Source: Saccharolobus islandicus REY15A
Lineage (GTDB): Archaea; Thermoproteota; Thermoprotei_A; Sulfolobales; Sulfolobaceae
NCBI RefSeq assembly: GCF_000189555.1
Contig: NC_017276.1
DNA: 64,000 nucleotides
Reading direction: 5' to 3' (one strand)
Shown: piece after piece, positions 3,008 through 36,223 of the stretch
Layout of the letters: each line of letters opens with the position of its first letter
Position numbering within the stretch: position 1 is the first letter of the stretch
The notes under the pieces: generated by a model
Seen by the model: the letters and a program-made list of their open reading frames with translations, nothing else
What the model was told of the DNA's origin: nothing
Databases searched by the model: none
Translations under genes and position numbers: made by a program

Positions 3008-4108
3008 ATGAAGCTTACAGTAAAGGAAGTTAAGGAGCTTTTTAAGCCAAAATTATTACCAATAATTTGGAAAGATGAAAGTAATACCCTGACAATCTTG
3101 GATCAATCCTTATTGCCTTTTCAAAAGGTTTACGTGGATTTAAAGGATGTTGAAAACACAGCGTTAGCCATAAAGAATATGCAAGTTAGAGGTGCTCCAG
3201 CCATAGGAATCACTGCCGGATACGGAATGATACTAGCGTTGATCAACAACAAGAATGTAAAGACATTAGATGACGCTATTAGGGAATTAACTAGGGCTAA
3301 GACCATATTAGATTCAGCTAGACCTACAGCTGTTAATTTAGTTTGGGCGACCTCAAGAATGTTAACTTTAGCTAAAAATACAGTGGAAAGTGGTAACGCC
3401 AAGGCTGTAAATGAACTAATAGAACTAATGAAAGTTGAGGCTAAGAAGATTTTCGATGAGGAGTATGATGCTGAAATACAAATGGGGCTTTACGGTTTAG
3501 AGAAATTAAACGATGGTGACACAGTACTAACGCAGTGCAATGCTGGTGGTTTGGCTACTGGTACTGGGTTAGGAACTGCATTGGCTCCAGTGAAATTAGC
3601 TAAGGCCTTAGGGATGAGCGTTTCAGTAATTGCTCCAGAGACAAGGCCTTGGTTGCAAGGAAGTAGGTTAACCGTTTACGAATTAATGGAGGAAGGAATA
3701 AAGGTCACGTTAATAACAGATACTGCAGTTGGTTTAGTAATGTATCGAGATATGGTGAATAACGTAATGGTTGGTGCTGACAGGATATTGAGAGATGGGC
3801 ACGTCTTCAATAAAATAGGGACATTTAAGGAAGCGGTTATAGCCCATGAATTGGGTATACCATTTTACGCACTGGCACCAACTTCCAGTTTCGACTTAAA
3901 GAGTAACGTTAACGACATTAAGATTGAGGAGAGGGATCCCAATGAAGTAAGGACAATTAGAGGGATACCAATAGCTCCAGAGGACGTAAATGTATATAAT
4001 CCAGTATTTGATGTTACTCCGCCTAAATATATTACTGGTATTATAACTGAAAAGGGAATAATATATCCTCCATTCCATGAGAATATTAGAAAAATCGTTG
4101 AAAGGTAA
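3008..4108 (+). CDS. mtnA: S-methyl-5-thioribose-1-phosphate isomerase (eIF-2B alpha/beta/delta family)
   Basis: [51 protein letters not shown] motifs. Confidence 0.92.
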
Positions 4109-4150
4109 CTTAGGAAAAGTAATTTAAATATCAAGTCAGAATTAACCTTA

Positions 4151-5116
4151 ATGAGAGTTTTAACAAAGATTATCTTGATAGTTTTCGTATTTGAGGTAGT
4201 GTTATTCTTAATAGCCTCAAGCATACCTCAGAATAATCCCTCATTAGTATCAGCGTTTAACAGTACGGAAAATCAAGTATTAAACCAATCTTATTTCGGT
4301 AAGGTATTAATGATCTTTGGTAACAACGTGAGGGTCGCGTTCTTGGATTTCATACCTGCTGTTGGAATGATCATATTGGCTGTAAGTATATACTCAACTG
4401 GGGCAGTTTTAAGTGCGTTTTCATCTAGTCTCAATGTTCCTGGAATTTTGTCAGCCTTAGGCTTAATGACATTACCACACTCATGGCTTGAACTACCCTC
4501 TTATGCCGTAGCTGCATCCAGTGGGTTATACATTGTAATTAGACCAAGGGAGTGGGTGAGAGGTCTACTAACCCTCATAATTGTCCCAATAGAGTTATTC
4601 TTAGCTGCGTTGGTTGAATCAAGTGAGTTTTACGTAAGCAATCCGTATATATTATGGCTTTATTCAATACCAGCCTTTGTATTCTTGTACTTCCTTTATG
4701 AATTCTTACAAAAAAGAGCTGACAAATACATTAAAGTAAAGACACCAGTAACTCAACAACAGAATGTAATTCAAATTCAACAACCAACATACGCCGATTA
4801 TATAACTAGATACAACCAGAGTTGGAACACTGCAAGCTATTACGAAACTCAAGGTAACTTAGCTGAGGCTATGAGATATTATTGGGAGGCTATTTTCTAC
4901 TTAATTACGGCAGTTGGGAACAAATTGGGAATGCCTACGTTGACAAAGGAGGATCAAGATAATGTGATAAAATCAGTTGCGTACAAGGTTGGAAACCCTC
5001 AACTATACGATATCTATAACGAAGCATTCAAAATTAGGATTGAAAATAGGCTAAGTGATTTCCAAATATTTAAGGAGTATTTATATCAGTTAGCAAGGTA
5101 TTTGAATTCTATCTAA
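4151..5116 (+). CDS. SpoIIM-domain membrane protein with a soluble helical C-terminal domain
   Basis: IFGNNVRVA and LPHSWLELPSY SpoIIM-type motifs, TM helices, Q-rich linker and a helical tail. Confidence 0.7.
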   Translation: MRVLTKIILIVFVFEVVLFLIASSIPQNNPSLVSAFNSTENQVLNQSYFGKVLMIFGNNVRVAFLDFIPAVGMIILAVSIYSTGAVLSAFSSSLNVPGILSALGLMTLPHSWLELPSYAVAASSGLYIVIRPREWVRGLLTLIIVPIELFLAALVESSEFYVSNPYILWLYSIPAFVFLYFLYEFLQKRADKYIKVKTPVTQQQNVIQIQQPTYADYITRYNQSWNTASYYETQGNLAEAMRYYWEAIFYLITAVGNKLGMPTLTKEDQDNVIKSVAYKVGNPQLYDIYNEAFKIRIENRLSDFQIFKEYLYQLARYLNSI

Positions 5117-5520
5117 CTAATAATTTTTTCACTTATCACCTCTATTCCCAACTTTAAGGCTAGATCATAGTATTTTTTAGGGATAGCAAACACTATCAAG
5201 AAACTTCTCACTTTTTTAGAAAATTTATTTTTTAGGATTTTTTCTCTAATTAACAACTGCTCTATAGTGGAGTAGTCTGCGTAGTTTTTGGCTAAAAATA
5301 AGTAAATCTCATCTCCCTCCTCATAATACATGATTGGTAACGAGAATCCTATTCTTAAAATGCCCTCATCGTCTATCAAAAACTCCCTCTTTATTTTAGC
5401 TAATTTAACTCCCTTGCTCTCCAATTGCGGTTTAAACATATTAACTATTAAATATTCAATCTCTTCCTCCTTTCTTGAAATATCAGTGAGGAATTTTAGT
5501 ACTTGATCTTCTAAGCTCAT
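5113..5520 (-). CDS. Hypothetical protein, degenerate PD-(D/E)XK/DUF3782-like
   Basis: 135 aa. Begins MSLEDQV and ends ALKLGIEVIS, like the 36329..37087 protein. Confidence 0.55.
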   Translation of the reverse strand: MSLEDQVLKFLTDISRKEEEIEYLIVNMFKPQLESKGVKLAKIKREFLIDDEGILRIGFSLPIMYYEEGDEIYLFLAKNYADYSTIEQLLIREKILKNKFSKKVRSFLIVFAIPKKYYDLALKLGIEVISEKIIS

Positions 5521-5642
5521 ACTATAATATCATACTCCCCCTTATTAAAAATAATTTCTCAAAATACAATTGCACACAGCTGCACATAACAGTACATAAA
5601 AATACATATAGTCTTTTTAAGTAAAAATTAAAATATTATCTT

Positions 5643-5924
5643 ATGAAAACCCTTTTAGTACCGCTAACAACTTTTATGATGCTTGACGTTATAACTACAG
5701 CACTGGGATTATTTAAGGGACTTATGGAAAGCAATCCAATAATTAACGCGTTATATTCATCACTACCATTTCCGATTTTCGTTGTGGTATTCCTTCTAAT
5801 AAAGGTTGGCGTGTTAGGTTTAATATACGTTCTTTATAAATATACTAAACTCGATTTAGTGCTCATTCTTGGGATAGGTATTTCTCTGATAGTCTTCATT
5901 AACAACGTCTTTCTCATCTCTTAA
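5643..5924 (+). CDS. Small membrane protein (DUF5658-like)
   Basis: LDVITT..GL...ESNPII motif with three hydrophobic segments. Confidence 0.6.
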   Translation: MKTLLVPLTTFMMLDVITTALGLFKGLMESNPIINALYSSLPFPIFVVVFLLIKVGVLGLIYVLYKYTKLDLVLILGIGISLIVFINNVFLIS

Positions 5925-6458
5925 TAAATTATTTACGTATTTCAGCAGTAAATAGACCGCAATTAGGTTCATCATTAAGAACATGATTATACCTACATAC
6001 TCTAACCCTTGGGGAGCATATACAGTAGTATAGAGTGATGGACTTATCATTAATATTAAGGAAAGTATACTATCTCCTATCATCCATAGGGCTAAAAGAA
6101 GAACCTTAAAGTTTCTGCTAAGTTCCTTTAGAGGAGAACCTATCATTAAACCTCCAATTACTAAAGAAACCTCCTCAATTAGTCGTACGGATAAGATCTC
6201 AGCTCCTAAGTTAAAAAAATATGGATAATGCCATAGGAAAGCAATTGAAGCACCAACTATTACAGCTATACTTTTGTCCACGATTTTCCTTCTTATGATA
6301 TAATATGAAAGAAGAATACCAGCCCCAAAAAGTGAATAATGAGCTAACATATAGGGTATTGGGTTAATGAACATATACTCCTCTGTAAATGGATTAACAG
6401 AAACCGCGATAAGAAAGATACAGAAAATAAGAACTGCTATAAAAAAATAATTATTCAC
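5856..6458 (-). CDS. DUF1404 family membrane protein (CtaG-like), directly downstream of soxM
   Basis: MLAHYSL, FLWHYP and WMIGDSILS motifs; GTG at 6458 preceded by AAGGTGA; 11 nt after the soxM stop. Confidence 0.7.
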   Translation of the reverse strand: MNNYFFIAVLIFCIFLIAVSVNPFTEEYMFINPIPYMLAHYSLFGAGILLSYYIIRRKIVDKSIAVIVGASIAFLWHYPYFFNLGAEILSVRLIEEVSLVIGGLMIGSPLKELSRNFKVLLLALWMIGDSILSLILMISPSLYTTVYAPQGLEYVGIIMFLMMNLIAVYLLLKYVNNLLRDEKDVVNEDYQRNTYPKNEH

Positions 6459-6469
6459 TTTTTCACCTT

Positions 6470-8842
6470 TTATACGAAAAGATGAAGGTAGAATGTACTG
6501 AATACTACGACCCATATGGCATCTACAAAGTGCCAATAGTACGTTGCCGCAACCGATCCCCCATATGGTGTTACTCCCTTATAAGCCCTTAATAGTACAA
6601 ATGCCCACACCACCAATCCCATGATTACGTGGAATCCATGTAAACTTACTGTACTAAAGAAGAACGCTGTAAACGCTGATTGTTGTGGGGTAAAGTGTAT
6701 TACGTGCGTAAACTCGTAAACTTGTCCCATTAAGAACGTGAATCCCATTACCGCAGTTAGTATCCCTAGAGCCTTAAACATCTTCATATTTCCTTTCTTA
6801 AACTCTTCATATGCTAAATGTGCTGGTATGGAACTTGAAAGCAGTATAACTGTCATTATTACTGGCAACGGGAAGTACTCAACTCTTAATGGCGGTACAT
6901 TTGCATACGCTATAGGATTAGTGATTGGGCTTGCTACAAACATGTATCCTCCTATAAAAGATCCGAACAAACATATCTCAGCTAATATGAACCATAATAC
7001 TGCAGACCTCGCATCCCTCATTACAATAGTTCCTAATGAAGGCGTTAAAGCCATACCATTATTCACGCTACCAGCTGAGACTGGTGAACCACCGTCTAGT
7101 TGCATAGGCGGAGGTATTTGTTTGAACCATTGATCATATGCCCAATATAATCCAGTTCCTATGAAAGCCAGTAATAATATAATCCCAATTGGTATTAAAT
7201 TAATAAACATGAACATGAAACCTAAAGGTATAAACGACATTACAATTCCAAGTATGCTGTAATATGGGAAGCTTACTCCGTGATATTCTTCATAATGAGC
7301 GCCATCCAATGACTTACCAAAACTTAATGGTAATTTTACTGGTTTGATGTAGAAATCTGGTAAGCCTATCTGTATGGCGTTCCATGGATCTATTGTTTCC
7401 ACTACCTTACCCTTTATCCATGAGTATAACAAATCACCAAATGTCATTATTAATCCTATCCCCATTAATACTCCTCCAACATCAGTCATTTGCTGAAATG
7501 GTATGTAAATTACTGAGGGGACTGCGGCATATCTTCTAGGCATTCCTAGAACTCCATCAATAATCATACCAGTGGCTATTAGAAATGCACCAGCTACTAT
7601 CATTATAGTTCCACTTTTCACTAGATCTTCGTGATACCACTTACCAGTAAAGTATGGGAAATAGTAAATCAAACCAGCTAGTAGTGCAAATAGTATTGCG
7701 AACACCATATAATGGAAGTGTCCAACCACTAAATAGGTACCATTAAAAGCATAGTCTAGAGGTACTAATGGGAAGAACACTCCGGTTATTCCTCCAACCA
7801 AGAATATGGCTATAAACGATATCACTAAAATTGCAGGTGCCTTGTATCTTATCTCTCCACCATATAAAGTCGCAGTCCAGTTGAATACCTTTACTCCAGA
7901 AGGCACTGCAATTGCCATTGTTGTTGCAGATGACACTATTTGTGCTACTGTATTATCAATAGCTGTGAACATGTGGTGCATCCATACTCCTAGTACGCTT
8001 AGAAATGCTATGGCCATTGACGATAGTGCCAATGCTTTGTAACCGTAAATTTGCCTACCGACCATTCTAGGCAAGATCTCACCAACTAGCCCCATTGCAG
8101 GTAATATTAATATGTACACCTCGGGATGTCCAAAGAACCAGAACAAGTTTTGCCATAATACTGGACTTCCACCTAAAGCCTGATCAAAGAACGGTAAGTT
8201 CCACAATCTTTCCAGATAGGCGAAAACTAGTCCTGCAGTTAATGGAGGCATTGCGACCACTAGTAATATCGCAGTGGCAAAGAATGACCACGTAAATAAT
8301 GACATCTTAAAATACGGTATTTTCTTCAGTTTTATAATAGTCATAAGGAAATTAACTCCTGTTAGTGTTGATGAAATACCTGATAATATAAGGGCAATCT
8401 CGACTAACGTTACACCTAACCCATAATTCACTGATGTCTCGATGGAGAGAGGCGCATACATATACCAACCTGTATTTATGGGGCCGAACCATGGGGCTAT
8501 TAGTCCTAAGAAAACTGCTGGAACTAAAATCCAAAAGGATAACGCATTAATTCTAGGCCAGTACAAATCATGGGCTCCTATCATTCTGGGAATAAGATAA
8601 TTTGCGAAACCCACTGAAATAGGCATTACCATGAAGAATATCATGAAGATACCGTGTAATGACACAGCGTTATAATAATCTACGGCACTTAAGCTTTGAT
8701 AAGTTAGCTGGTATCTTATTAAGGCTGCGTTTACTGCACCTGCTAATAGTGCAATTATACCCAGTGTTATATACATTTGTCCAATATCACTTGCACTTGT
8801 CGTGTATAATGCTACTTTTAAAACTCTTTTTATGTTCATCAT
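6470..8842 (-). CDS. soxM: Heme-copper oxidase subunit I+III fusion
   Basis: Subunit I motifs [30 protein letters not shown]; fused subunit III motifs LHGFHV and YWHFVD. Confidence 0.95.
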
Positions 8843-8951
8843 AATAAGTGTTAAAATTTTATTTTTTAAATCTTTCTATTAAAAGCCAACTAACCTAATC
8901 AATTTAGAGTTACTTAGATTATTAAATAAAAAACACATGTATCTTATCTAC

Positions 8952-9545
8952 TTAACTTGTTGTAGCATAAGGAGTAGTCACATTTGATGAAACAATTACC
9001 ACTGACCACATTCCACTTTGTGCGTGTCCTAAGATGCCACATACTAACATGTAAGTTCCAGCGTTTAATGGTCCCCATAATCCACTATCTAGTTGACCGC
9101 TTGAAATTCCGCTGGTTTGATAATTGCTGGTGCTAGCACCTACTACATATAATATTTTTCCAAACTGCCCAACATCTGGATTACTAGGAGTTGCGGTAGT
9201 GTTTTGTAAAAGGATTAAGTTATGGGGCAAGGATTGTTCATTTACGAATTTCACGTAAACTGACCATCCTGCAGGGATATAAATTTTCAGTTGTCCATTG
9301 CTAGTACCATTAAAATTAAAAGTTGGTCCACTCGTTAAAACGGCAATTGTTAAAAATACTGTTTTATTTGCAGAATTATTATTCAATGGAATTTGGATTG
9401 AGGTTGAAGTGGAAGTACTTGTAGCTGTGGGAGTAGGTGCTGAGAGTACTTGGTATTCATAGTAAGCGTATACTGAAACTCCTACTGCTATTATTGCGAC
9501 TAGGATTCCAACGATTACGGGCAGAATAGAGGACTGTGCTTTCAT
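8952..9545 (-). CDS. soxE: Sulfocyanin (blue copper protein)
   Basis: N-terminal TM anchor, S/T linker, FNFNG, PHN, C-terminal CGILGHAQSGM copper ligands. Confidence 0.92.
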   Translation of the reverse strand: MKAQSSILPVIVGILVAIIAVGVSVYAYYEYQVLSAPTPTATSTSTSTSIQIPLNNNSANKTVFLTIAVLTSGPTFNFNGTSNGQLKIYIPAGWSVYVKFVNEQSLPHNLILLQNTTATPSNPDVGQFGKILYVVGASTSNYQTSGISSGQLDSGLWGPLNAGTYMLVCGILGHAQSGMWSVVIVSSNVTTPYATTS

Positions 9546-27737: not shown

Positions 27738-28220
27738 TTGATGATACTTTCTCACCAGTCAATTAAAAAGCTGTTAGGCAAAGTGATAATGAATTACGTT
27801 GAGGAGAACGTAAGGGAGAACGGCTACGATTTAAGAATATGTGGTGAAAAGTACTACGAAGTTGAAGAGGGTGCTAAATTACCAAGTATAAAGGCTAAAA
27901 TTAGGGAAATACCTTTTAAAGAGGTTGCTAATCTATCACCCCTTAATACTTACTTATTCGAGTCATGTGAGGAGTTTAACATGCCAGATAACTTAGCGGT
28001 GTTGATAACCTTAAAAAGTACTATGGCTAGGAACGGTTTTCTAGCTCCTCCTACTGTTATTGATGCTGGGTACAAGGGAAAGATTTACTTAGCTATAACT
28101 TCCGTCTATGGTTCTTCATTAGCTAAGGAAATCAGTACTCATCATTTAATATTTTTAGAATTAGATCAGAAAACTGAAAAAGTTTATAGTGGCAAATATC
28201 AAGGAGGTATACCAATCTAG
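27738..28220 (+). CDS. dcd: dCTP deaminase family protein
   Basis: [28 protein letters not shown]. Confidence 0.8.
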
Positions 28221-28774
28221 CTGAGAACGGAAGAGTATAATAAAATTCTTTGCTGATAAACCGGAAAATATTTTTCTGGAACTTTAAAATATTCATTTGA
28301 AAATATACAGAACTCGCTAAGGGGGCCCATAGCTAATTGCTTTCTCCATAAATTTTGTGAAAAAGGTTTAATCTCAGTATAGAAGTCTTCATACCTCATA
28401 CCAACTGGTTTGGATATCCAATAACCAAATCTATAAGATGGGGATAATTGCTCTCCGTTTAGGAGCTTATATAATCCACCCTTACCGTTTCTAGCAATCC
28501 TTGCTATAGAATCATGAACTGCTTTTATATCATTTGATTCCAATATTATATTATTAAGTAAATCCAATGTCTTTGAGGTTTCTATGAAATACCAGTCTTC
28601 ATAAACTTCTCCTTCAATCCAAGGTACATGATCTACCTTTACTACAAGGGATCCTAAATAGCCCTCAATCTTGGCTTTTTTATTAAAGTAGTCATGAAAG
28701 TTCAACAGCGAACTTTCATATTCATTAGCTGGAAAATCTCTAGCTCTTTGATGCCAAAAGACATATGCTAACAT
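28217..28774 (-). CDS. Conserved hypothetical protein
   Basis: 185 aa open frame with typical composition; MLAYVFWH start, YEDWY and WRKQLAMGP motifs. Confidence 0.7.
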
Positions 28775-29178: not shown

Positions 29179-30098
29179 TTACTCACTAGCATCAAAGGGC
29201 CTATTATAATACAGCACAGCCCAAGTAATAACAGCCAATTTCCTTACACAAGCAGTAATCAACTTCCTACCCCTAAGCCTACCCTTATGCTCCTCATAAA
29301 AACGCTTGATAACAGGATTAACCTTGATGGCAGTAAAAGCTGCAAGATAGGAAGCCCTCCTCAAAACAGCATCACCCCTCTTAGAAATACCTCTCGATAC
29401 AACACTCTTACCACTAGACTCAACAACAAGACCACAATAAGCAACAAACCTCTTCTTATCACTAAAGCGCCTAACATCACCAACCCTAGCCAAGATAATA
29501 CAACCCAAGGTTTTACCAATACCCGGAATAGTGAAAATCAAACTATCCTTGGGGACTAGCTCTCTAAGCCTATCCTCAATCTTCCTACCCTCAAGCCTCT
29601 CCAACTCCTCCAAAAGAAACCTCAGACAACACTATACTATCCCCACCCCTCAAAACCTCCTCCAAATTCTTCCTAGACAGACTATCCCTATAGCCTAAAA
29701 GTACCAAATCCCTCCTCAACCTTAACCCTAACAATACTCCTAGTAACAAAATCCCACTGGCTAGTCAACTCCCTAGCATCACTTGTTGTAAACTCACTAC
29801 CCATACTTACAACTATTTCTGCTAGCATCATTCTTATCACTCTTCTTACCCCTAAAACCCTTGAACTTCTTGAGTATAAAGGGATTAATAATCCTAACAT
29901 CATACTCACCCATCAAGTACTTAGCGAGGTTAATGTGGTAAACTCCAGTACTTTCAATACCCACTTTGCAACCCTTAGGCAAGATCTTCCTTATCTCCTC
30001 ATAACCTCGCTTGTCATTAGTAAACTCGTAGTACTTGCCTTGAAAATACATAATTAATTTATCTTTTGATCATCTATTCCCGCAACTGGGGCCTCCAA
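29179..30098 (-). pseudogene. IS110 family transposase (ISC1190/ISC1229-like), multiply frameshifted
   Basis: TTG start MEAPVAGID with a 1-nt loss right after; GIESTGVYH; KSDKND; IPGIGKTL; ESSGKS; ACVRKLAV, spread over several frames. Confidence 0.88.
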
Positions 30099-30202
30099 AT
30101 TTACCCTTATTCGGGCTTTAAGCCCAACTTCCGGTTCGAATTGGAGGCAGGCCAAGCTAACAGCCGAGCTTTGAGCCCAAGGGAGTCAACGGCCTACACC
30201 CC

Positions 30203-30231
30203 AGTCAGATCTGTATTACTCAGATCTGACT
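30203..30231. other. Perfect hairpin in the non-coding leader of the IS110 element
   Basis: AGTCAGATCTG-TATTACT-CAGATCTGACT: 11-bp stem, 7-nt loop. Confidence 0.85.
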
Positions 30232-30593
30232 AATATGTTTTATATAAGAGGCGAAGCATGTGGTGCCTCTCAAGAGGTCAACGAGTAAAGAAGACTTCCG
30301 CTTGCTATTAATTATCCCGTTTTTACATGATAATATTGCCACAATATAAGAATATTCAGTTAAACTATTTTATTTACTTTTTGACTTTTTGGAATTATTT
30401 TCGGGTGACGAATTTGAAGTCTACGATTTGTATTTAAATCTTTTTCTTTAAGTTAGCACATATTAACATTTAAAAATATTAAAAAATGATTACTGATATT
30501 CCTCATGAAATATAAACATTATATAAGACTTACAATCATATACTAAAAAGTGTTAAGAGTAAAAAAAAAGCTAATTATCTATATAGAATAATA

Positions 30594-30600
30594 GAGGGAG
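30594..30600 (+). promoter_or_regulatory. Shine-Dalgarno-like site for the small Cys-rich ORF
   Basis: GAGGGAG 5 nt before ATG 30606; an A-run and TTATCTATATA (30575-30585) upstream could be BRE/TATA. Confidence 0.6.
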
Positions 30601-30605
30601 TAAAA

Positions 30606-30728
30606 ATGCAAAATGTCCCAATAGGCTTAGTTTTCCCAAAGTGGGTAGAACTTGGAAAGCTAAACGAGGGTGAGTTTCGCAGGAAAATTGCAGTATGTAT
30701 AAATGGTAATTGTGGGTGTGGAACTTAA
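30606..30728 (+). CDS. Putative RiPP precursor peptide, 40 aa (missed by the ORF track)
   Basis: MQNVPIGLVFPKWVELGKLNEGEFRRKIAVCINGNCGCGT*. All three Cys lie in the last 10 residues; RBS present; 21 nt upstream of the radical SAM gene on the same strand. Confidence 0.8.
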   Translation: MQNVPIGLVFPKWVELGKLNEGEFRRKIAVCINGNCGCGT

Positions 30729-30749
30729 TAAGATGATTAATGGAGGTGA

Positions 30750-31673
30750 ATGAAGATAAGTAATAGTTTTTTTCAAATTATTTTGATGTTATCAGAACAA
30801 TGCAATTTTAGGTGTTTTTATTGCTATGAAAGATTTTCTAATAATAAATTAAATGATTTGGATCAACGGATAATAAAATTTATTCATAAACTAGTAAATG
30901 ATTACGATATACATAGTATTGTTATGTCCTTTTTTGGCGGAGAACCCATGCTATATTATGATAAAATTATAAAAATTATGGAATATAATAATTCTATAGT
31001 AAATACATACGGTGATATGACTACAAATGGATATTTGCTTAGCATAGAAAAATTTGAAAAATTAGTAAAACTTAACGTAAGAGAGTATCAAATAACTTTT
31101 GACGGTTATAAGGATTATCATGATAAATTTAGAGTAACAGTAGGTAAAACCCCCACTTTTGATAGGATCTTCAAAAACATTATATCATATAAGAATGTAA
31201 AGAGTGATTTCAAAGTCAAAATAAGAATACACATACATAAAAATAATTCTTCATCAGTAAAAAAGCTTATAGACCTATTAGCAGATTATTTAGGTAATGA
31301 TAAAAGATACTCAATACTTATAAGATCCATATCGAAACTTGGAGGATCTAATGATGAGATGATATCGTTACCGAGTAGAGAAGAAGTAGAAGATGTACTA
31401 GCTTATGCTAAGTCAAAGGGACTCAGCATAGCTATGCCAATACATAACATCTGTTATGCATCTCTACCAAATTCAATAGTTATTAGGAGTGATGGAAAAA
31501 TATCTAAATGTACAGTAGATTTATACTCAGATAGAAATATAATAGGATATTTAGATAGTGATGGAAATCTAAGATTAGACCAAAATAAATTAAGATTTTG
31601 GACCAGAGGATTTTTTACGGGTGATTTAAAAGAGCTAAGATGCCCTCTTACTGGTGAGGACAATTATGATTGA
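30750..31673 (+). CDS. Radical SAM protein with Twitch/SPASM-like C-terminus (putative peptide maturase)
   Basis: CNFRCFYC (C18/C22/C25), FFGGEP, TTNG, QITFDG..HD..R; C-terminal CYASLPNSIVIRSDGKISKCT...RCP; RBS GGAGGTG. Confidence 0.92.
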   Translation: MKISNSFFQIILMLSEQCNFRCFYCYERFSNNKLNDLDQRIIKFIHKLVNDYDIHSIVMSFFGGEPMLYYDKIIKIMEYNNSIVNTYGDMTTNGYLLSIEKFEKLVKLNVREYQITFDGYKDYHDKFRVTVGKTPTFDRIFKNIISYKNVKSDFKVKIRIHIHKNNSSSVKKLIDLLADYLGNDKRYSILIRSISKLGGSNDEMISLPSREEVEDVLAYAKSKGLSIAMPIHNICYASLPNSIVIRSDGKISKCTVDLYSDRNIIGYLDSDGNLRLDQNKLRFWTRGFFTGDLKELRCPLTGEDNYD

Positions 31674-32169
31674 TGTTCATATAGTGTTTGGAGGAAATTT
31701 GGAAATAGGAATCCATAATATTGACAAAAAAGAAATATATGTGACTATAATTCCATTAATTCCCAATTTTTTCAAATTATTGGATTATAATTATAGAAGG
31801 GATTCTAAAGAAGTTTATTATAATTATAATTCTGAGAACAATTCTACATTAGAATTAATAAGAAAATATATAAATCAAAGTTTTAATATAGATGATCAAA
31901 TTGATAATATAATTGTTTCTGGTTCAGAAAGTTATTTCTTACAAAATCCTTTAGATATAAGTCTTACTATAATAAGGAAAATATTTGGAAATAACTACAA
32001 TAAAATTTATTATTATACACTATTAAATAAATTTATTGACTTTGATCAAATGGAATTAATTCAACTTTCTAATATTACCAATAAAGAAGTCTCAGTATAT
32101 TCATCTATTGTAGGTCCTCTGTTAAAAATAAGAAGTATGAGGCTTGAACATAAAGTGATCCCAGTATGA
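31666..32169 (+). CDS. Orphan hypothetical protein in the radical SAM operon
   Basis: ATG 31666 overlaps the rSAM stop and follows GGTGAGG; its stop overlaps the MFS start (ATGA); N/I/Y-rich, no recognised motif. Confidence 0.7.
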   Translation: MIDVHIVFGGNLEIGIHNIDKKEIYVTIIPLIPNFFKLLDYNYRRDSKEVYYNYNSENNSTLELIRKYINQSFNIDDQIDNIIVSGSESYFLQNPLDISLTIIRKIFGNNYNKIYYYTLLNKFIDFDQMELIQLSNITNKEVSVYSSIVGPLLKIRSMRLEHKVIPV

Positions 32170-33329
32170 AAATAGCTAAGGAGATAATTAATGTAGTATT
32201 TTTGCTTACTCTTCTTAATTTCGTAAATGCGTTTATAGGATATTATTTTGTAATAAACACATATTTAGTTTATAATAACTTGGTAATCTCAGCGTTAGTA
32301 TTGATTCTATTGAACGCCCCGAATGTCTTCTCAATACCTCTACCCTACATTTTTAAGAGATTAAAAAGTGTAAAAATTAATGTAATAATATTCCCTCTAC
32401 TGGCCTTCCTTGTAATCTTCACTTTAAGTCTAGACTTGACACCGTTAGAAGAGATCCTTCTAATAGCTTTATTCGATTTCCTAATTTTAACAGTAATCAG
32501 ATCATTAGGATATTATGCAAGAACTTTACTAGACAAATACGGCGAATTCATAGATTATAATTCTATTCAGCAAATTTTCTTTTTAGGTGCTTCTATCATC
32601 GCGTTAATAATAGCGGGGCTATTTAATACATACTTGCCCAGAACTTATCTACCGATTATAGGATTCCCTCTATTGATAGTAGTCCTTTTATCCATGACAT
32701 TAAATGACGTTAAGATAACCCTCTCTTCCACCAATTCCTTTAAGGTATGGGTAAACTATATAAAGAGTAACCGCATATTTATGTTCTTAGAAACACGGGT
32801 ATATCCAGTTATGGCCTTAGCTAATGCATCGACCGTTTTGTTTCTCAAACTTGTTTACGTAAACAAGGAGACATTCCCAGAATACATTACTGTAGTCTTA
32901 GTAGTGAGTATATTAGCTCAGGCAATTGGTGCCATTATTGCCCTAAAGTGGAAGTCGGAGACTACGAGAAAATTCTTGCTCTTATCACTCCCTGCCATAT
33001 CAATTGAATATGTATTCCCCTTCATCCGTGGCGATTTAATAACTATTTCAGTTTTAACTTTCTTACAGTCAGTGCTTGTGGCTTATGTTTTCATCCATAT
33101 TAATTCTATTTATCAATATATTATTAATAAAGATGTTTATGTAAATGTCACAGTCACACAAGCAGTTTTAACACAAGTCTCAATATTTATAGTGAGCACT
33201 TTAGTATCGGTAATAGCTACTGTCGTGGGGATCACATATACTTATATAGGTAATGCGACAATAATGCTACTAATAGTGCTATTTACAATATTCTCCAATA
33301 CCATAAAAGATATAAAGGCAAAAGATTAA
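32166..33329 (+). CDS. MFS-type transporter, probable exporter of the rSAM operon
   Basis: 387 aa with about 11-12 hydrophobic segments; translationally coupled to the preceding gene. Confidence 0.8.
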   Translation: MKIAKEIINVVFLLTLLNFVNAFIGYYFVINTYLVYNNLVISALVLILLNAPNVFSIPLPYIFKRLKSVKINVIIFPLLAFLVIFTLSLDLTPLEEILLIALFDFLILTVIRSLGYYARTLLDKYGEFIDYNSIQQIFFLGASIIALIIAGLFNTYLPRTYLPIIGFPLLIVVLLSMTLNDVKITLSSTNSFKVWVNYIKSNRIFMFLETRVYPVMALANASTVLFLKLVYVNKETFPEYITVVLVVSILAQAIGAIIALKWKSETTRKFLLLSLPAISIEYVFPFIRGDLITISVLTFLQSVLVAYVFIHINSIYQYIINKDVYVNVTVTQAVLTQVSIFIVSTLVSVIATVVGITYTYIGNATIMLLIVLFTIFSNTIKDIKAKD

Positions 33330-33626: not shown

Positions 33627-34064
33627 TTACCAAATAATTTCTATCCCTAACTTCCTCGCAACTAGAGTGAGATCTTTATCTCCAGTTATTATTCCTACAC
33701 CTAATTTCTTAGCTAAATGAATTATTGTAGAGTCAACTATGCTTAACCTTCTTCCATTCATTTCCTTTGCCAAGATGTCATCACCCTCCTTCTTAATTTT
33801 AGCACTGTCAATAAAATCGTCAGAAGTCAACTCATTAACCTTGAAATAAGTGAAAAGAAATGTTCTGGCTTCATCTATGGACTTAAGGGAGGGAATTCTA
33901 CTCCTAAGCCAATGCACAATAAATTCAAAAACTACGGTAGAAGGGATTACCCCCTCATATAGACCGCTCCTTATACCAGACATAACCTCCTCTCCCCTCT
34001 TCGTTAACTCACCATATGCCATTGCCAAGATAGCATAAGTATCAACTATTATGCTCTTTTCCAA
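33627..34064 (-). CDS. vapC: PIN-domain toxin
   Basis: IIVDTYA, E in STVVFEF, LSIVD, TGDKDL acidic tetrad. Confidence 0.9.
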   Translation of the reverse strand: MEKSIIVDTYAILAMAYGELTKRGEEVMSGIRSGLYEGVIPSTVVFEFIVHWLRSRIPSLKSIDEARTFLFTYFKVNELTSDDFIDSAKIKKEGDDILAKEMNGRRLSIVDSTIIHLAKKLGVGIITGDKDLTLVARKLGIEIIW

Positions 34065-34282
34065 AATTCCTCTTCCTCCTCATCTAATTCCCTTTCAGCA
34101 TCTTCTGAAGACCCCTTACAACATTTCCACACCTTATCCCATAGATCTATTTTCTCAATAATTATCTTACCTCCCTCTACTCTCATCTTAACAATATCGC
34201 CCTCATTAATTCTGACCTCTTCTCTTATCGCCTTAGGAACTACTATAATACCCTTCTTATTAACCTTTACCCTAACTTCCAT
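34049..34282 (-). CDS. vapB: AbrB/MazE-type antitoxin
   Basis: VKVNKKGIIVVPKAIR swapped-hairpin motif, acidic tail, overlaps the vapC start. Confidence 0.88.
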   Translation of the reverse strand: MEVRVKVNKKGIIVVPKAIREEVRINEGDIVKMRVEGGKIIIEKIDLWDKVWKCCKGSSEDAERELDEEEEEFWKRA

Positions 34283-34415: not shown

Positions 34416-35000
34416 ATGCTAAGACCTAAAGAAGTATGCCAACGCTTAGGAATATCCTATGCAACGCTTAGAGAATACGTAAAGAAGGGTTATATCAAAC
34501 CAGTAATACTACAGAGCGGGAAGTGGAGGTTCAGAGAAGAGGACATAGAAAAGCTGATGGGGATTGTTAGAAAGAGGAAAGTGATCCTTTATGCTAGGGT
34601 ATCATCAAACACACAAAAAGACGACTTGGTAAACCAGGTAAAATATTTACAAGAGCAAGTAAAGGACTACGACCAAGTAATAACTGACGTAGGTTCTGGG
34701 TTAAACATGAAAAGGAAGGGATTCCTCAAGTTGTTGAGGATGATACTAAACAACGAAGTATCAAAAGTAGTCATAGCTTACCCAGACAGACTGGTTAGGT
34801 TTGGTTTCGAGATAATAGAAGAAGTATGCAAAGCACACAACTGCGAAATAGTAGTTCTTAATAGGGAGGACAAAACACCAGAACAAGAGTTGATAGAGGA
34901 TCTGATCTCAATCCTAGTATCATTCAGTGAAAAACTCTACGGAATGAGGAGTCACAAATACGAAAAGGTGAAGAAGTGTGTCGAAGAACTTAAGAATTAA
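34416..35000 (+). CDS. tnpA: IS607 serine recombinase (TnpA)
   Basis: N-terminal MerR-like HTH, YARVSS catalytic motif, DVGSG, DRLVRFG. Confidence 0.92.
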   Translation: MLRPKEVCQRLGISYATLREYVKKGYIKPVILQSGKWRFREEDIEKLMGIVRKRKVILYARVSSNTQKDDLVNQVKYLQEQVKDYDQVITDVGSGLNMKRKGFLKLLRMILNNEVSKVVIAYPDRLVRFGFEIIEEVCKAHNCEIVVLNREDKTPEQELIEDLISILVSFSEKLYGMRSHKYEKVKKCVEELKN

Positions 35001-35180
35001 ATCATTCAAACCAGAGGAGGAGTACATTTACCTAACTTACTCCATAAAGAACAACAAGAGGGAGGAGACGAAAATACTACTGGAGAACTACAGAGTCCTA
35101 CTACAGAAAGCATTAGACTGGTTATGGGAGAGGGTGAAGGTAGAGAGAAAAGAAGTGAAGAAGGGTAAGAAAGTACTCAC
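34978..35180 (+). pseudogene. tnpB: 5' fragment of tnpB, cut by the IS630 insertion
   Basis: Overlaps the tnpA end; about 68 codons before the TA target; no RuvC or zinc-finger region remains after the insertion. Confidence 0.75.
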
Positions 35181-35182
35181 TA

Positions 35183-36223
35183 GTATTTCCGAAAAGTTTA
35201 TAGCCTAGTATTACCAAATTGAATTATGCAAGATTTAGTTAAAGCTTACGAGGAAGAGAAGGACGCGAGGATTAAGGAGAGGATTCTTGCGGTGAAGCTG
35301 CATGTGGTTGACGGTAAATCGGAGAAAGAAGTTTCGAAAATGCTGAACAAGGGTTATTCCACAATAAAATTGTGGGTTGGCAAGTACAAGAAAGAAGGTC
35401 TTGACGGACTAAGAGACAAACCTAGATCAGGAAGACCGAGAAAAGCTGAGAAAGAAAAAATAAAACAAATACTAGAAGACCAGCCTCAAAAATACGGAAT
35501 ACAAGAAGAGTACTGGACAATGAGAACACTAAAAATAGCACTACTACAACAAGGAATAGAGTACAAGAAATCCAGGCTATACGAGATAGTTCACGAACTA
35601 GGATACAATCTAGTAAAACCTAGGCCTACTAACGTTCAAGCAAGAAAGGACATGTGGGAAGACTTTAAAAAAAATAAAGAAGTTGGAAGAAGAGGCTCTC
35701 TTCTTTCCAGACGAGAGTAGGGCAGTAATTAGCACGTCGATCCGGAAGGTTTTAAGATTGGTAGTAAGCCCGTAATGCACGTCAATATAGGTTTTTCTTC
35801 GATCTATGTCATTCTTGCTGTAAACGCTTGGACTGGTGAAGTAGTTGTTTCTCTTGTTAGGAGGCCTAATTCTGAGTCTGTTAAGTACTTCTTGAGGTAC
35901 TTTAAGAGACGTTTTGGTAGTGGAAGGGTCTACATGGTTATGGATAATTATTCTCCTCACAAGACTAAGGGTACGCTTGAGGTTTGTCGTAGGAAGGGCA
36001 TTCATCCCATATTTACTCCTCCTTATTCGCCCGAGCTTAACATGGCCGAGGCAGTCTTCAAGTCCCTCAAGGAATACATGAGCAATAAAATATTTTATAC
36101 GATAGAAGACGTTAAAAACTGTATTAAGCAGTTCTTTGAGGAAAATAAGTATAAGTTTAATCTTAATGCAATAACATACTTAGAATTAGATAAAACTGAA
36201 CGCTAAGAACTTCCCGGAAATAC
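35183..36223 (+). mobile_element. IS630 family IS (ISC1048-like)
   Basis: 16-bp IR GTATTTCCGAAAAGTT / AACTTCCCGGAAATAC (2 mismatches), TA on both sides (35181-35182, 36224-36225), 1041 bp. Confidence 0.9.
35226..36206 (+). pseudogene. IS630 transposase with a -1 frameshift site and an extra, probably inactivating, frameshift
   Basis: HTH ORF (GRPRK); slippery TTTAAAAAAAAT near 35664; the -1 frame carries DES but stops near 35775; MDNYSPHK and YSPELNMAE are in another frame. Confidence 0.8.

What the first reader, a model, noticed from the sequence alone, without database searches (positions are those of the whole stretch)
30594..30728. Unannotated 40-aa leader/core-type peptide ending CINGNCGCGT
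Seen: the ORF is below the 60-aa cutoff of the track. It has GAGGGAG before the ATG, a Cys-free N-terminal 30 aa (a hydrophobic VPIGLVFPKW patch, then charged EGEFRRK) and a Gly/Asn-rich tail with C31-x4-C36-x-C38. Inference: residues 1-30 are the leader and the tail is the core. Cys thiols could form thioethers to Asn/Gly/Thr carbons, and RRK could be a protease site.
Basis: partly seen in the sequence, partly recalled or inferred. Interest (0 to 1): 0.85.

Follow-up and report, generated by a model that had tools for sequence, protein, structure and literature searches.

The report
Archaeal radical-SAM peptide precursor gene
The 40-codon ORF is very likely a real gene for a small peptide that the neighbouring radical-SAM enzyme cross-links (probably Cys to Asn) before export, making it a candidate first peptide natural product from the model archaeon Saccharolobus islandicus.

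Summary
The ORF (30606-30728, +) is exactly as described. It opens a four-gene operon in Saccharolobus islandicus: peptide, radical-SAM (rSAM) enzyme, an internally deleted gene of unknown function, and an MFS-type transporter.

Alone, the ORF is no more than chance would give. The evidence is comparative:
- Acidianus brierleyi (rSAM 78% identical) has a homologous 38-aa ORF at the same place, with the same start, the same frame and all three Cys.
- Sulfuracidifex tepidarius keeps a homologous leader remnant.
- More distant archaeal and bacterial rSAM homologues have adjacent small ORFs with Cys-bearing C-termini. Some sit in textbook RiPP clusters (GG leader, C39-ABC exporter).
- In 30 such peptides, 53% of core Cys have Asn at -3 (0 of 10,000 shuffles reach this).
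- The window's core pattern N-x-N-C-x-C recurs in 8 of 520 nearby same-strand ORFs and 0 of 3,917 others.

The rSAM has no RRE domain and only three C-terminal Cys (twitch-like). Its closest solved relatives are CteB, anSME and SkfB.

Best reading: a RiPP precursor whose Cys36 and Cys38 are thioether-linked to Asn33 and Asn35, as NxxcB does. The chemistry, expression and function are untested. It is a new variant of a known kind.

The parts
30575..30586 (+). TATA-like box (TTATCTATATAG), about 20-31 nt upstream of the ATG. This is the inferred promoter of a leaderless or short-leader operon mRNA.
   Evidence: Read. Acidianus has TTTACATA at the equivalent distance (L006 5761-5768, ATG at 5792). 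Inference only; no transcript data.
30594..30600 (+).
   Evidence: Present but not conserved in Acidianus. Its relevance is doubtful if the mRNA is leaderless.
30606..30695 (+). Predicted leader, residues 1-30 (MQNVPIGLVFPKWVELGKLNEGEFRRKIAV). The leader/core boundary is not determined.
   Evidence: M1, V9, W13, L16, K18 and F24 are invariant in S. islandicus, Acidianus and the S. tepidarius remnant.
30696..30728 (+). Predicted core, residues 31-40 (CINGNCGCGT), plus the stop codon. It contains N33-x-x-C36 and N35-x-x-C38, i.e. N-x-N-C-x-C at 30702-30719.
   Evidence: All three Cys are conserved in Acidianus. Asn at -3 of Cys is enriched in the family. N-x-N-C-x-C is specific to small ORFs next to the rSAM and occurs once in the window.
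30742..30749 (+). GGAGGTGA directly before the rSAM start codon (internal ribosome-binding site). The peptide and rSAM genes are 21 nt apart.
30750..31673 (+). Radical-SAM peptide maturase, 307 aa.
- CxxxCxxC at C18, C22, C25 (30801-30824).
- Twitch-like C-terminal domain with only three Cys: C235 (31452-54), C254 (31509-11), C298 (31641-43).
- No RRE domain.
- NCBI starts it at M13 (295 aa), which would cut the conserved first strand.
31654..32169 (+). 171-aa ORF (167 aa from the ATG at 31666). It is an in-frame, internally deleted copy of a 389-411-aa orphan partner gene, missing about 216 residues. Its start overlaps the rSAM stop and its stop overlaps the next gene's start.
   Evidence: residues 1-126 match 1-126 and residues 123-168 match 343-388 of the Acidianus protein. 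The family has only 10 members among 1.84 billion representatives and no Pfam match.
32166..33329 (+). 387-aa polytopic membrane protein, a divergent MFS-type transporter. It is the presumed exporter or immunity protein.
   Evidence: 57% identical to the Acidianus gene in the same position. Homologous (E = 1e-13) to the L009 protein, which matches Pfam MFS_1.

Best explanation
The ORF is the precursor gene of a ribosomally synthesised, post-translationally modified peptide (RiPP). It is the first gene of an operon: peptide, rSAM maturase, a deleted accessory gene, and an MFS exporter.

Proposed mechanism:
1. The first ~30 residues act as a leader that the rSAM recognises without an RRE domain.
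2. The C-terminal core CINGNCGCGT enters the active site, where a core Cys thiol binds the open iron of the single three-Cys auxiliary [4Fe-4S] cluster.
3. The 5'-deoxyadenosyl radical abstracts a hydrogen from the Asn three residues upstream, and a C-S bond forms.
4. Two such events (Asn33-Cys36 and Asn35-Cys38) would give a compact, overlapping bicyclic C-terminus, 2 Da lighter per link.
5. The product is exported by the MFS protein. Leader removal would need a protease encoded elsewhere.

Shown here: the gene order, the enzyme's architecture, conservation of the peptide, and the family-wide N-x-x-C / N-x-N-C-x-C pattern.

Inferred only: expression, the thioether chemistry and its regiochemistry (C-beta as in NxxcB, C-alpha as in QmpB), export, and biological role (antagonism or signalling).

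My sub-estimates: real precursor and substrate of this rSAM, about 0.85; the modification is a Cys-Asn thioether, about 0.55.
For: Gene order and enzyme:
- The peptide stop lies 21 nt before the rSAM start, and the downstream genes overlap.
- The best rSAM family matches are RiPP maturases: TIGR04463 1e-34, CefB 7e-33, geopeptide, PapB.
- The closest solved structure by sequence is CteB.
- The AF2 model (pLDDT 88.8) best matches CteB, anSME and SkfB.
- Across 22 family members the only invariant Cys are the CxxxCxxC triad plus C235, C254 and C298.

Conservation of the peptide:
- Acidianus has a 38-aa homologue with the same start and frame, all three Cys, and one in-frame codon indel.
- Peptide DNA is 64% identical against 42% for the 100 nt upstream; dN/dS is 0.48.
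- S. tepidarius keeps a leader remnant.

Family-wide pattern:
- Other archaeal loci end in KCGNFIC, NGGCGGGC, GGCGPSDC and NNACLNIRNCR.
- Bacterial loci have a shared leader motif, GG cleavage sites, and in Delftia a C39-ABC exporter, S41 protease, HlyD and OEP.
- Asn is at -3 of 40 of 76 core Cys. The shuffle test gives 35 observed against 6.4 +/- 2.3, with 0 of 10,000 shuffles reaching it.
- The unbiased test gives 17.8% against 2.9%, p = 8e-11.
- N-x-N-C-x-C is in 8 of 520 nearby ORFs against 0 of 3,917, p = 3e-8.

Precedent: NxxcB makes a Cys-S to Asn-C-beta bond in N-x-x-C, with the Cys activated on an auxiliary cluster (PMC9389541).
Against: - There is no transcript, ribosome-profiling, proteomic or mass-spectrometric evidence.
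- Only 21 of 75 loci have an upstream ORF with N-x-x-C, and 23 of 82 have a leader-motif ORF nearby. L097, in the same clade, shows no Cys peptide upstream.
- The 30 peptides were hand-picked, on leader and Cys tail rather than on Asn.
- C31 has no Asn at -3. The Micrarchaeota and some bacterial cores lack N-x-x-C.
- NxxcB and QmpB have full SPASM domains with two auxiliary clusters; this enzyme has one, so the analogy is functional and not one of membership.
- The operon may be decaying: the partner gene is internally deleted, IS fragments flank it, and sister loci are damaged.
- dN/dS of 0.48 over 38 codons is weak evidence of constraint.
Confidence: 0.6

Rival explanations
1. The peptide is a real substrate of the rSAM, but the chemistry is different. 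Options are a sactionine to an alpha-carbon (Gly or Asn), epimerisation as by the short RRE-less EpeE/YydG, Cys oxidation as by anSME, or another cross-link. In that case the conserved Asn at -3 would be a recognition or conformational element rather than the acceptor.
For: - Foldseek also returns anSME, SkfB (alpha-thioether) and EpeE (epimerase, about 320 aa) with E-values from 1e-9 to 1e-12.
- QmpB links Asn-C-alpha to Cys-S.
- Sequence alone cannot fix the regiochemistry or reaction type in this superfamily (PMC10288494).
- Several cores lack N-x-x-C.
Against: - Cys is the only universally retained core residue, and it pairs at a fixed spacing with Asn or Asp (61% of Cys). This is what a Cys-acceptor cross-link predicts.
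- A three-Cys auxiliary cluster with an open site is the arrangement used for thiol activation in CteB-type enzymes (established knowledge; PMC9389541).
- No sulfatase gene is nearby.
Confidence: 0.22
2. The gene family is real, but the S. islandicus copy is an inactive relic. It would be either not expressed or unable to yield a mature product, because the accessory gene is internally deleted and the locus lies in an IS-rich variable region.
For: - The partner gene has lost about 216 internal residues.
- IS110 fragments lie upstream, and IS607/IS630-type genes lie downstream.
- Many other S. islandicus and S. solfataricus strains carry only fragments of the transporter gene (85-293 aa).
- S. 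tepidarius has lost the core and the rSAM.
Against: - The peptide, rSAM and MFS genes are intact, and the rSAM has every family-invariant residue.
- The deletion is in frame and keeps the overlapping start and stop codons.
- The Sulfuracidifex metallicus and bacterial clusters work without any partner gene.
- The exact peptide is found on 48 contigs.
Confidence: 0.12
3. The ORF is a chance reading frame in the 5' region of the rSAM operon, and the rSAM acts on some other substrate.
For: - ORFs of this length are common in this AT-rich DNA.
- The peptide has no detectable homologue in the 5.8-billion-protein database apart from itself.
- No curated family covers it.
Against: - The frame, start and Cys codons are kept in Acidianus despite 36% DNA divergence and one in-frame indel.
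- The same core pattern lies next to distant rSAM homologues.
- There is no Rfam match for a structured leader RNA.
Confidence: 0.05

Closest known systems
NxxcA/NxxcB (Streptococcus orisratti; beta-thioether RaS-RiPP)
   Same: The core has Cys with Asn three residues upstream (N-x-x-C). The rSAM would link Cys-S to Asn, with the thiol activated on an auxiliary Fe-S cluster (PMC9389541).
   Different: - NxxcB has a full SPASM domain with two auxiliary clusters, whereas this enzyme has one three-Cys cluster and no RRE.
- NxxC clusters sit beside shp/rgg quorum-sensing genes in streptococci; there is none here.
- I could not obtain the NxxcB sequence, so direct homology was not tested.
[quoted passage not shown]
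   Same: An Asn-Cys thioether installed by an rSAM.
   Different: The link is to the alpha-carbon, the enzyme is a SPASM enzyme, and the precursor motif is different.
CteB / SCIFF ranthipeptide maturases (PDB 5WGG, 5WHY)
   Same: CteB is the closest solved relative by sequence (3e-11) and by fold (6e-13). It modifies a Cys-rich C-terminal core through thioether formation.
   Different: - CteB has an N-terminal RRE and a full SPASM domain.
- The SCIFF precursor has six Cys in 45 residues.
- The NCBIfam SCIFF-maturase score is far below its cutoff.
SkfB (twitch-domain sactisynthase, PDB 6EFN)
   Same: A thioether-forming RiPP maturase with a single auxiliary cluster in a twitch domain. It is among the top fold matches.
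   Different: SkfB keeps an N-terminal peptide-binding domain and makes an alpha-thioether. Sequence identity is about 21%.
NCBIfam TIGR04463 (rSAM next to Cys-rich peptide) and CefB (Cys-every-fifth maturase)
   Same: These are the best profile matches (1e-34 and 7e-33). The alignment covers the core and the first half of the SPASM domain.
   Different: - Scores are 120 and 114 bits against cutoffs of 525 and 600.
- The alignment starts at profile position 79-80, so the N-terminal domain is missing here.
- The second half of the SPASM domain is also missing.
CrpC/CrpA of Methanococcus voltae (PMC13692751)
   Same: An archaeal rSAM shown to install ranthionine thioethers on a Cys-rich substrate encoded next to it.
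   Different: CrpC has an RRE and a SPASM domain with three clusters in total. Its substrate is a protein rather than a 40-aa peptide, and it comes from a methanogen rather than the Sulfolobales.

Membership tests
rSAM-modified thioether RiPPs (sactipeptides / ranthipeptides) | A short precursor with a Cys-bearing core, encoded next to the maturase | tested here: met
   The 40-aa ORF lies 21 nt upstream of the rSAM, with three Cys in the last ten residues. It is conserved in Acidianus.
rSAM-modified thioether RiPPs (sactipeptides / ranthipeptides) | Radical-SAM core with CxxxCxxC | tested here: met
   Pfam Radical_SAM 8.9e-18; C18, C22 and C25 are invariant.
rSAM-modified thioether RiPPs (sactipeptides / ranthipeptides) | C-terminal SPASM domain with seven Cys binding two auxiliary clusters | tested here: not met
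   Only C235-x13-G-x4-C254 and C298 are present and invariant. The CxxCx5Cx3C block is absent, so the domain is twitch-like. SkfB shows that twitch enzymes can still be thioether maturases.
rSAM-modified thioether RiPPs (sactipeptides / ranthipeptides) | RRE (PqqD-like) leader-binding domain, fused or discrete | tested here: not met
   The enzyme aligns from profile position 79-80 of RRE-containing families. The family alignment starts at most about 30 residues before CxxxCxxC. No PqqD-like gene is in the operon.
rSAM-modified thioether RiPPs (sactipeptides / ranthipeptides) | A Cys-S to carbon thioether in the mature product | not testable with these tools
   This needs mass spectrometry or NMR.
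NxxC subfamily (NxxcA/NxxcB) | N-x-x-C motif in the core | tested here: met
   N33-x-x-C36 and N35-x-x-C38 in the window. Family-wide enrichment is shown.
NxxC subfamily (NxxcA/NxxcB) | Maturase orthologous to NxxcB (SPASM, two auxiliary clusters) | tested here: inconclusive
   The architecture differs. No NxxcB sequence or model was available, so similarity could not be measured.
NxxC subfamily (NxxcA/NxxcB) | Linkage to the shp/rgg quorum-sensing operon of streptococci | tested here: not met
   No such genes are in the window or in related loci.
NCBIfam TIGR04463 / CefB / PapB / SCIFF-maturase equivalogs | Score above the curated cutoff | tested here: not met
   Scores are 119.8 against 525, 114 against 600, 82.7 against 340, and 49 against 425 bits.
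Anaerobic sulfatase-maturating enzymes | Score above the cutoff and a sulfatase substrate gene nearby | tested here: not met
   62 against 349 bits. No sulfatase gene is in the neighbourhood. LAL14/1's 'arylsulfatase regulator' label is a legacy name.
Prokaryotic viperins (defence) | Full-length match to pVip models | tested here: not met
   Only the generic rSAM core (residues 12-175) matches, at 8e-16, which is weaker than the RiPP-maturase matches.

The most novel reading that the evidence does not exclude
This locus is the Sulfolobales representative of an uncharacterised, widely spread RiPP family found in bacteria and in several archaeal lineages. The family is defined by a minimal rSAM maturase (no RRE, one three-Cys auxiliary cluster) and by precursors whose C-terminal N-x-N-C-x-C cores are turned into overlapping Asn-Cys thioether bicycles. 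It would be the first modified-peptide natural product from a thermoacidophilic crenarchaeon. Existing RRE- and SPASM-based genome-mining pipelines would miss this enzyme type.
Probability: 0.4. Interest if true: 0.78.

Novelty: new variant of a known kind. Interest (0 to 1): 0.68.

Why it matters
- Characterised archaeal RiPPs are few. According to PMC12144867 only two haloarchaeal lanthipeptides had been characterised, and a methanogen rSAM thioether system acting on a protein was reported only in 2026. I found nothing for the Sulfolobales.
- The window matches a 2.52-Mb S. islandicus chromosome, whose size I recall as that of the genetically tractable strain REY15A; the strain was not verified here. 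If it is that strain, deletion plus mass spectrometry could test the prediction directly.
- The enzyme lacks the RRE and the full SPASM domain that large mining efforts use as filters; the 14,695-enzyme set of PMC10288494 is RRE-associated. The family of at least 414 detected relatives, with its conserved leader and N-x-x-C cores, may therefore be a blind spot.
- A minimal maturase of about 300 aa from a thermophile that makes tight four-residue thioether rings could also be useful for peptide engineering.

Tried and rejected
- **Peptide homologue search.** The search of 5.8 billion proteins found only the peptide itself, because small ORFs such as the Acidianus one are not called as genes. 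Synteny had to be used instead.
- **Curated families.** NCBIfam and Pfam scans of seven precursors found no family.
- **Structured RNA.** Rfam found nothing on 30100-30900, so a structured leader RNA is not the explanation.
- **Defence system.** PADLOC gave only generic pVip rSAM-core matches, so I rejected this reading.
- **Plasmid origin.** No DNA match to the plasmid collection.
- **Partner protein.**
  - No Pfam, NCBIfam or PADLOC family.
  - The AF2 model had pLDDT 40.9, so I ran no fold search on it.
  - The profile search against PDB gave one weak hit, to an uncharacterised archaeal protein (3C0B, E = 9e-4).
  - The exhaustive HMMER search found only 10 relatives.
  - Its function stays unknown. 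An actin-like ATPase fold is only my guess, from the strand and helix order and a DFGG motif.
- **RRK as a cleavage site.** Not conserved.
- **GAGGGAG as the ribosome-binding site.** Not conserved.
- **Flanking repeats.** I looked for repeats that would mark a mobile cassette and found none of note.
- **Second copy.** There is no second N-x-N-C-x-C gene in the window.
- **Literature.** Searches for the peptide string, its accession and locus tags returned nothing. Searches for RRE-less or twitch-type Asn-Cys thioether maturases returned no description of this family. Subscription journals are not covered.

Full report
**1. The observation**

The ORF runs from ATG 30606 to TAA 30726-30728 on the + strand. 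It encodes MQNVPIGLVFPKWVELGKLNEGEFRRKIAVCINGNCGCGT. GAGGGAG is at 30594-30600. The Cys are at residues 31, 36 and 38.

Taken alone, the ORF is not remarkable. The same 10 kb contains 64 ORFs of at least 30 aa.

The window is Saccharolobus islandicus: the exact proteins occur on a 2,522,992-bp chromosome. The peptide is already in NCBI and UniRef, and its V4A variant is WP_258164969.1, 'hypothetical protein'. It is therefore missing only from the scan's track, but it has no functional annotation, and the searchable literature does not mention it.

**2. The neighbourhood is an operon**

- **rSAM.** Twenty-one bases after the peptide's stop, preceded by GGAGGTGA, begins a 307-aa radical-SAM protein (30750-31673). 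Pfam Radical_SAM scores 8.9e-18.
- **171-aa ORF.** Its start overlaps the end of the rSAM gene (31654-32169).
- **Membrane protein.** The 171-aa ORF's stop overlaps the start of a 387-aa membrane protein (32166-33329).
- **Membrane protein identity.** It is 57% identical to the Acidianus gene in the same position. It is also homologous (E = 1e-13) to the protein at that position in locus L009, which matches Pfam MFS_1.
- **171-aa ORF identity.** It is an in-frame, internally deleted copy of a 389-411-aa gene that is intact in Acidianus, S. tepidarius, L009 and L097.

The partner family has only 10 members among 1.84 billion representative proteins and has no known domain. Its AF2 model was too poor to use. 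Sulfuracidifex metallicus and the bacterial clusters lack this gene, so it is accessory.

Around the operon:
- Upstream are two fragments of an IS110-family transposase.
- Downstream are a VapBC-like pair and IS607/IS630-type genes.
- The operon has 27-32% GC, against 35-41% in its flanks.

**3. The enzyme**

- **Profile matches.** The best NCBIfam matches are peptide maturases: TIGR04463 1.2e-34, CefB 7e-33, then geopeptide, PapB and others. All are far below their cutoffs. The alignments begin at profile position 79-80, which means the N-terminal RRE domain of those families is absent.
- **Invariant Cys.** In an alignment of 22 family members (300-370 aa, archaea and bacteria), the only invariant Cys are C18, C22 and C25 plus C235, C254 and C298. 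This is C-x13-G-x4-C, the first half of a SPASM motif, plus one more Cys. It amounts to a twitch-like domain for a single auxiliary cluster with three protein ligands.
- **Solved relatives.** By sequence the closest solved structure is CteB (3e-11). The AF2 model (pLDDT 88.8) best matches CteB, anSME, SkfB and ChlB. These are all enzymes that act on peptides and use auxiliary clusters.
- **Start codon.** NCBI's start at M13 would remove the conserved first strand, so I prefer the start at 30750.

**4. Conservation of the peptide in Sulfolobales**

- **Acidianus brierleyi** (rSAM 78% identical) has MQSISEKWVHQSWLDLVKLSKNKFSRQTAVCLDNCDCV at the same place. It has the same ATG and frame, 15 of 38 identical residues including all three Cys, and one in-frame codon indel.
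- **Divergence.** DNA identity is 64% in the ORF, 42% in the 100 nt upstream and 83% in the rSAM gene. dN/dS is 0.48 for the peptide and 0.22 for the rSAM. This is weak but real constraint, as is usual for RiPP precursors.
- **Sulfuracidifex tepidarius** keeps a homologous leader (MDGVPTNWVSPKWMELGKQSKEKFA...). It has lost the core and almost the whole rSAM through a deletion, while the partner and transporter genes remain.
- **Leader positions.** M1, V9, W13, L16, K18 and F24 are invariant in all three species.
- **Promoter.** A TATA-like box lies about 22-31 nt before the ATG in both S. islandicus and Acidianus, whereas GAGGGAG is not conserved. I infer a leaderless or short-leader mRNA.

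**5. The pattern across the rSAM family**

More distant archaeal loci also have a small ORF of about 40-58 aa just upstream of the rSAM:

| Locus | C-terminal end of the small ORF |
|---|---|
| Sulfuracidifex metallicus | ...LKCGNFIC |
| L009 (a MAG) | ...KNGGCGGGC |
| Micrarchaeota | ...LGGCGPSDC |
| L098 | ...TNNACLNIRNCR |

Bacterial relatives show the same arrangement, often with classical RiPP features:
- Delftia has an 80-aa precursor with a GG site, followed by a cupin/JmjC gene, an S41 protease, a C39-ABC exporter, HlyD and OEP.
- Bacillus toyonensis has ...TNGNCNCR....
- Vibrio has repeated CPDGD units.
- Many metagenomic loci share a leader motif (hydrophobic-x-hydrophobic-D-x-x-G-R/E followed by three hydrophobic residues). 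Some carry several precursor paralogues.

Statistics:
- In 30 collected precursors, 40 of 76 core Cys have Asn at -3 and 6 have Asp. At other positions Asn is 1-17%. Shuffling the last 25 residues gives 6.4 +/- 2.3 against 35 observed, and 0 of 10,000 shuffles reach that.
- Without any hand selection, N-x-x-C in the tail occurs in 17.8% of same-strand ORFs ending within 330 nt upstream of the rSAM, against 2.9% of background ORFs (p = 8e-11). The leader motif occurs in 12.7% against 0.4%.
- The window's own hexapeptide pattern N-x-N-C-x-C, within the last 15 residues, occurs in 8 of 520 nearby same-strand ORFs and 0 of 3,917 others (p = 3e-8). It occurs once in the whole window.

**6. Limits of the comparative evidence**

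- Only 21 of 75 loci show an upstream N-x-x-C ORF.
- L097, from the same clade as the window, shows none.
- Some cores lack the motif.
- C31 has no Asn at -3.
- The more distant rSAMs may therefore have other substrates, or their precursors may lie elsewhere.

**7. Mechanism**

According to PMC9389541, NxxcB forms a Cys-S to Asn-C-beta thioether in N-x-x-C motifs, with the thiol activated on an auxiliary cluster. QmpB links Asn-C-alpha to Cys-S.

A three-Cys auxiliary cluster with an open iron site, Cys as the one constant core residue, and Asn fixed at -3 together make an Asn-Cys thioether the most economical prediction. For this peptide that means Asn33-Cys36 and Asn35-Cys38, two overlapping four-residue rings.

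Not established by anything here:
- the carbon attacked;
- the fate of C31;
- how and where the leader is removed (no protease in the operon, and RRK is not conserved);
- the biological role.

**8. Comparison with known systems, and novelty**

- The system works like a ranthipeptide or sactipeptide system and resembles the NxxC subfamily in its core motif.
- It fails two architectural features of those families, the RRE and the two-cluster SPASM domain, and it fails every curated family cutoff.
- SkfB shows that twitch enzymes can make thioethers. SuiB-type leader binding outside the RRE is a precedent that I recall from the literature and did not test here.
- I found no description of this enzyme-precursor family or of any Sulfolobales RiPP.
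- Verdict on novelty: a new variant of a known kind.

**9. Verdict**

| Claim | Estimate |
|---|---|
| Observation confirmed | yes |
| Leader/core interpretation supported | yes |
| Real precursor of this rSAM | about 0.85 |
| Modification is an Asn-Cys thioether | about 0.55 |
| Overall confidence in the full explanation | 0.6 |
| Interest | 0.68 |

Noticed in passing
L006 5889-5920 (Acidianus brierleyi), also in L015: A perfect 16-bp tandem duplication (ATAATTGTGACTGTGT twice) lies at the end of the precursor core. It places the stop codon right after ...CDCV. Without it the peptide would continue as ...CDCVLKRQQEVIHYDNTR and overlap the rSAM start. The metagenomic relative L015 has the same duplication, with one change that gives ...CDCG.
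   Followed up: partly
L095 4742-5008 (Sulfuracidifex tepidarius): A deletion fuses the precursor leader to unrelated codons and removes the core and all but the last ~20 codons of the rSAM (...GELRCPLTGEDNYD). The partner (389 aa) and MFS (388 aa) genes stay intact.
   Followed up: yes
window 29179-29613 and 29797-30051 (- strand): Two ORFs match the C-terminal (Transposase_20) and N-terminal (DEDD_Tnp_IS110) parts of an IS110-family transposase. This is a broken IS copy directly upstream of the operon, and local GC rises to 41% with strong negative GC skew.
   Followed up: partly
window 33627-34282 (- strand); L006 9373-9997: A VapBC-like toxin-antitoxin pair (PIN domain plus AbrB/MazE-type antitoxin) follows the transporter gene in both S. 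islandicus and Acidianus. Synteny therefore extends beyond the peptide operon.
   Followed up: partly
window 34416-36206: This stretch holds an IS607-type serine recombinase (MerR-HTH plus Resolvase) followed by a short ORF, then an IS630-like transposase split into an HTH part (35226-35720) and a DDE_3 part (35775-36206). It is an IS-rich variable region.
   Followed up: no
L011 (Bacillus toyonensis-type contig) 3643-9467: The rSAM and its downstream precursor (...TNGNCNCR...) sit next to a phage integrase, and an AimR (arbitrium receptor) gene lies about 2 kb further on. This copy is probably carried by a prophage.
   Followed up: no
L012 (Vibrio cyclitrophicus) 4571-5011: The 146-aa ORF upstream of the rSAM carries seven CP(D/S)xD repeats instead of N-x-x-C. 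It lies among defence-island-type genes (SNIPE/T5orf172, PIN, group II intron reverse transcriptases, GAPS4-like nuclease). It may be a Cys-Asp variant of the same chemistry.
   Followed up: no
L035 (metagenome), about 1.3 kb upstream of the rSAM: Four tandem paralogous precursors share the leader motif (LDREGRVTITN-like) and have multi-Cys cores rich in N-x-N-C and N-G-C.
   Followed up: no
window 28217-28774 (- strand): A 185-aa ORF with no Pfam or PADLOC match lies between a dCTP-deaminase-like gene (27738-28220) and the IS110 fragments.
   Followed up: no
cluster 1: A 432-aa ENA protein (P0003) is listed as a member of the 40-aa peptide's 90%-identity cluster, although the two sequences look unrelated. 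This is probably a clustering artefact of the database.
   Followed up: no
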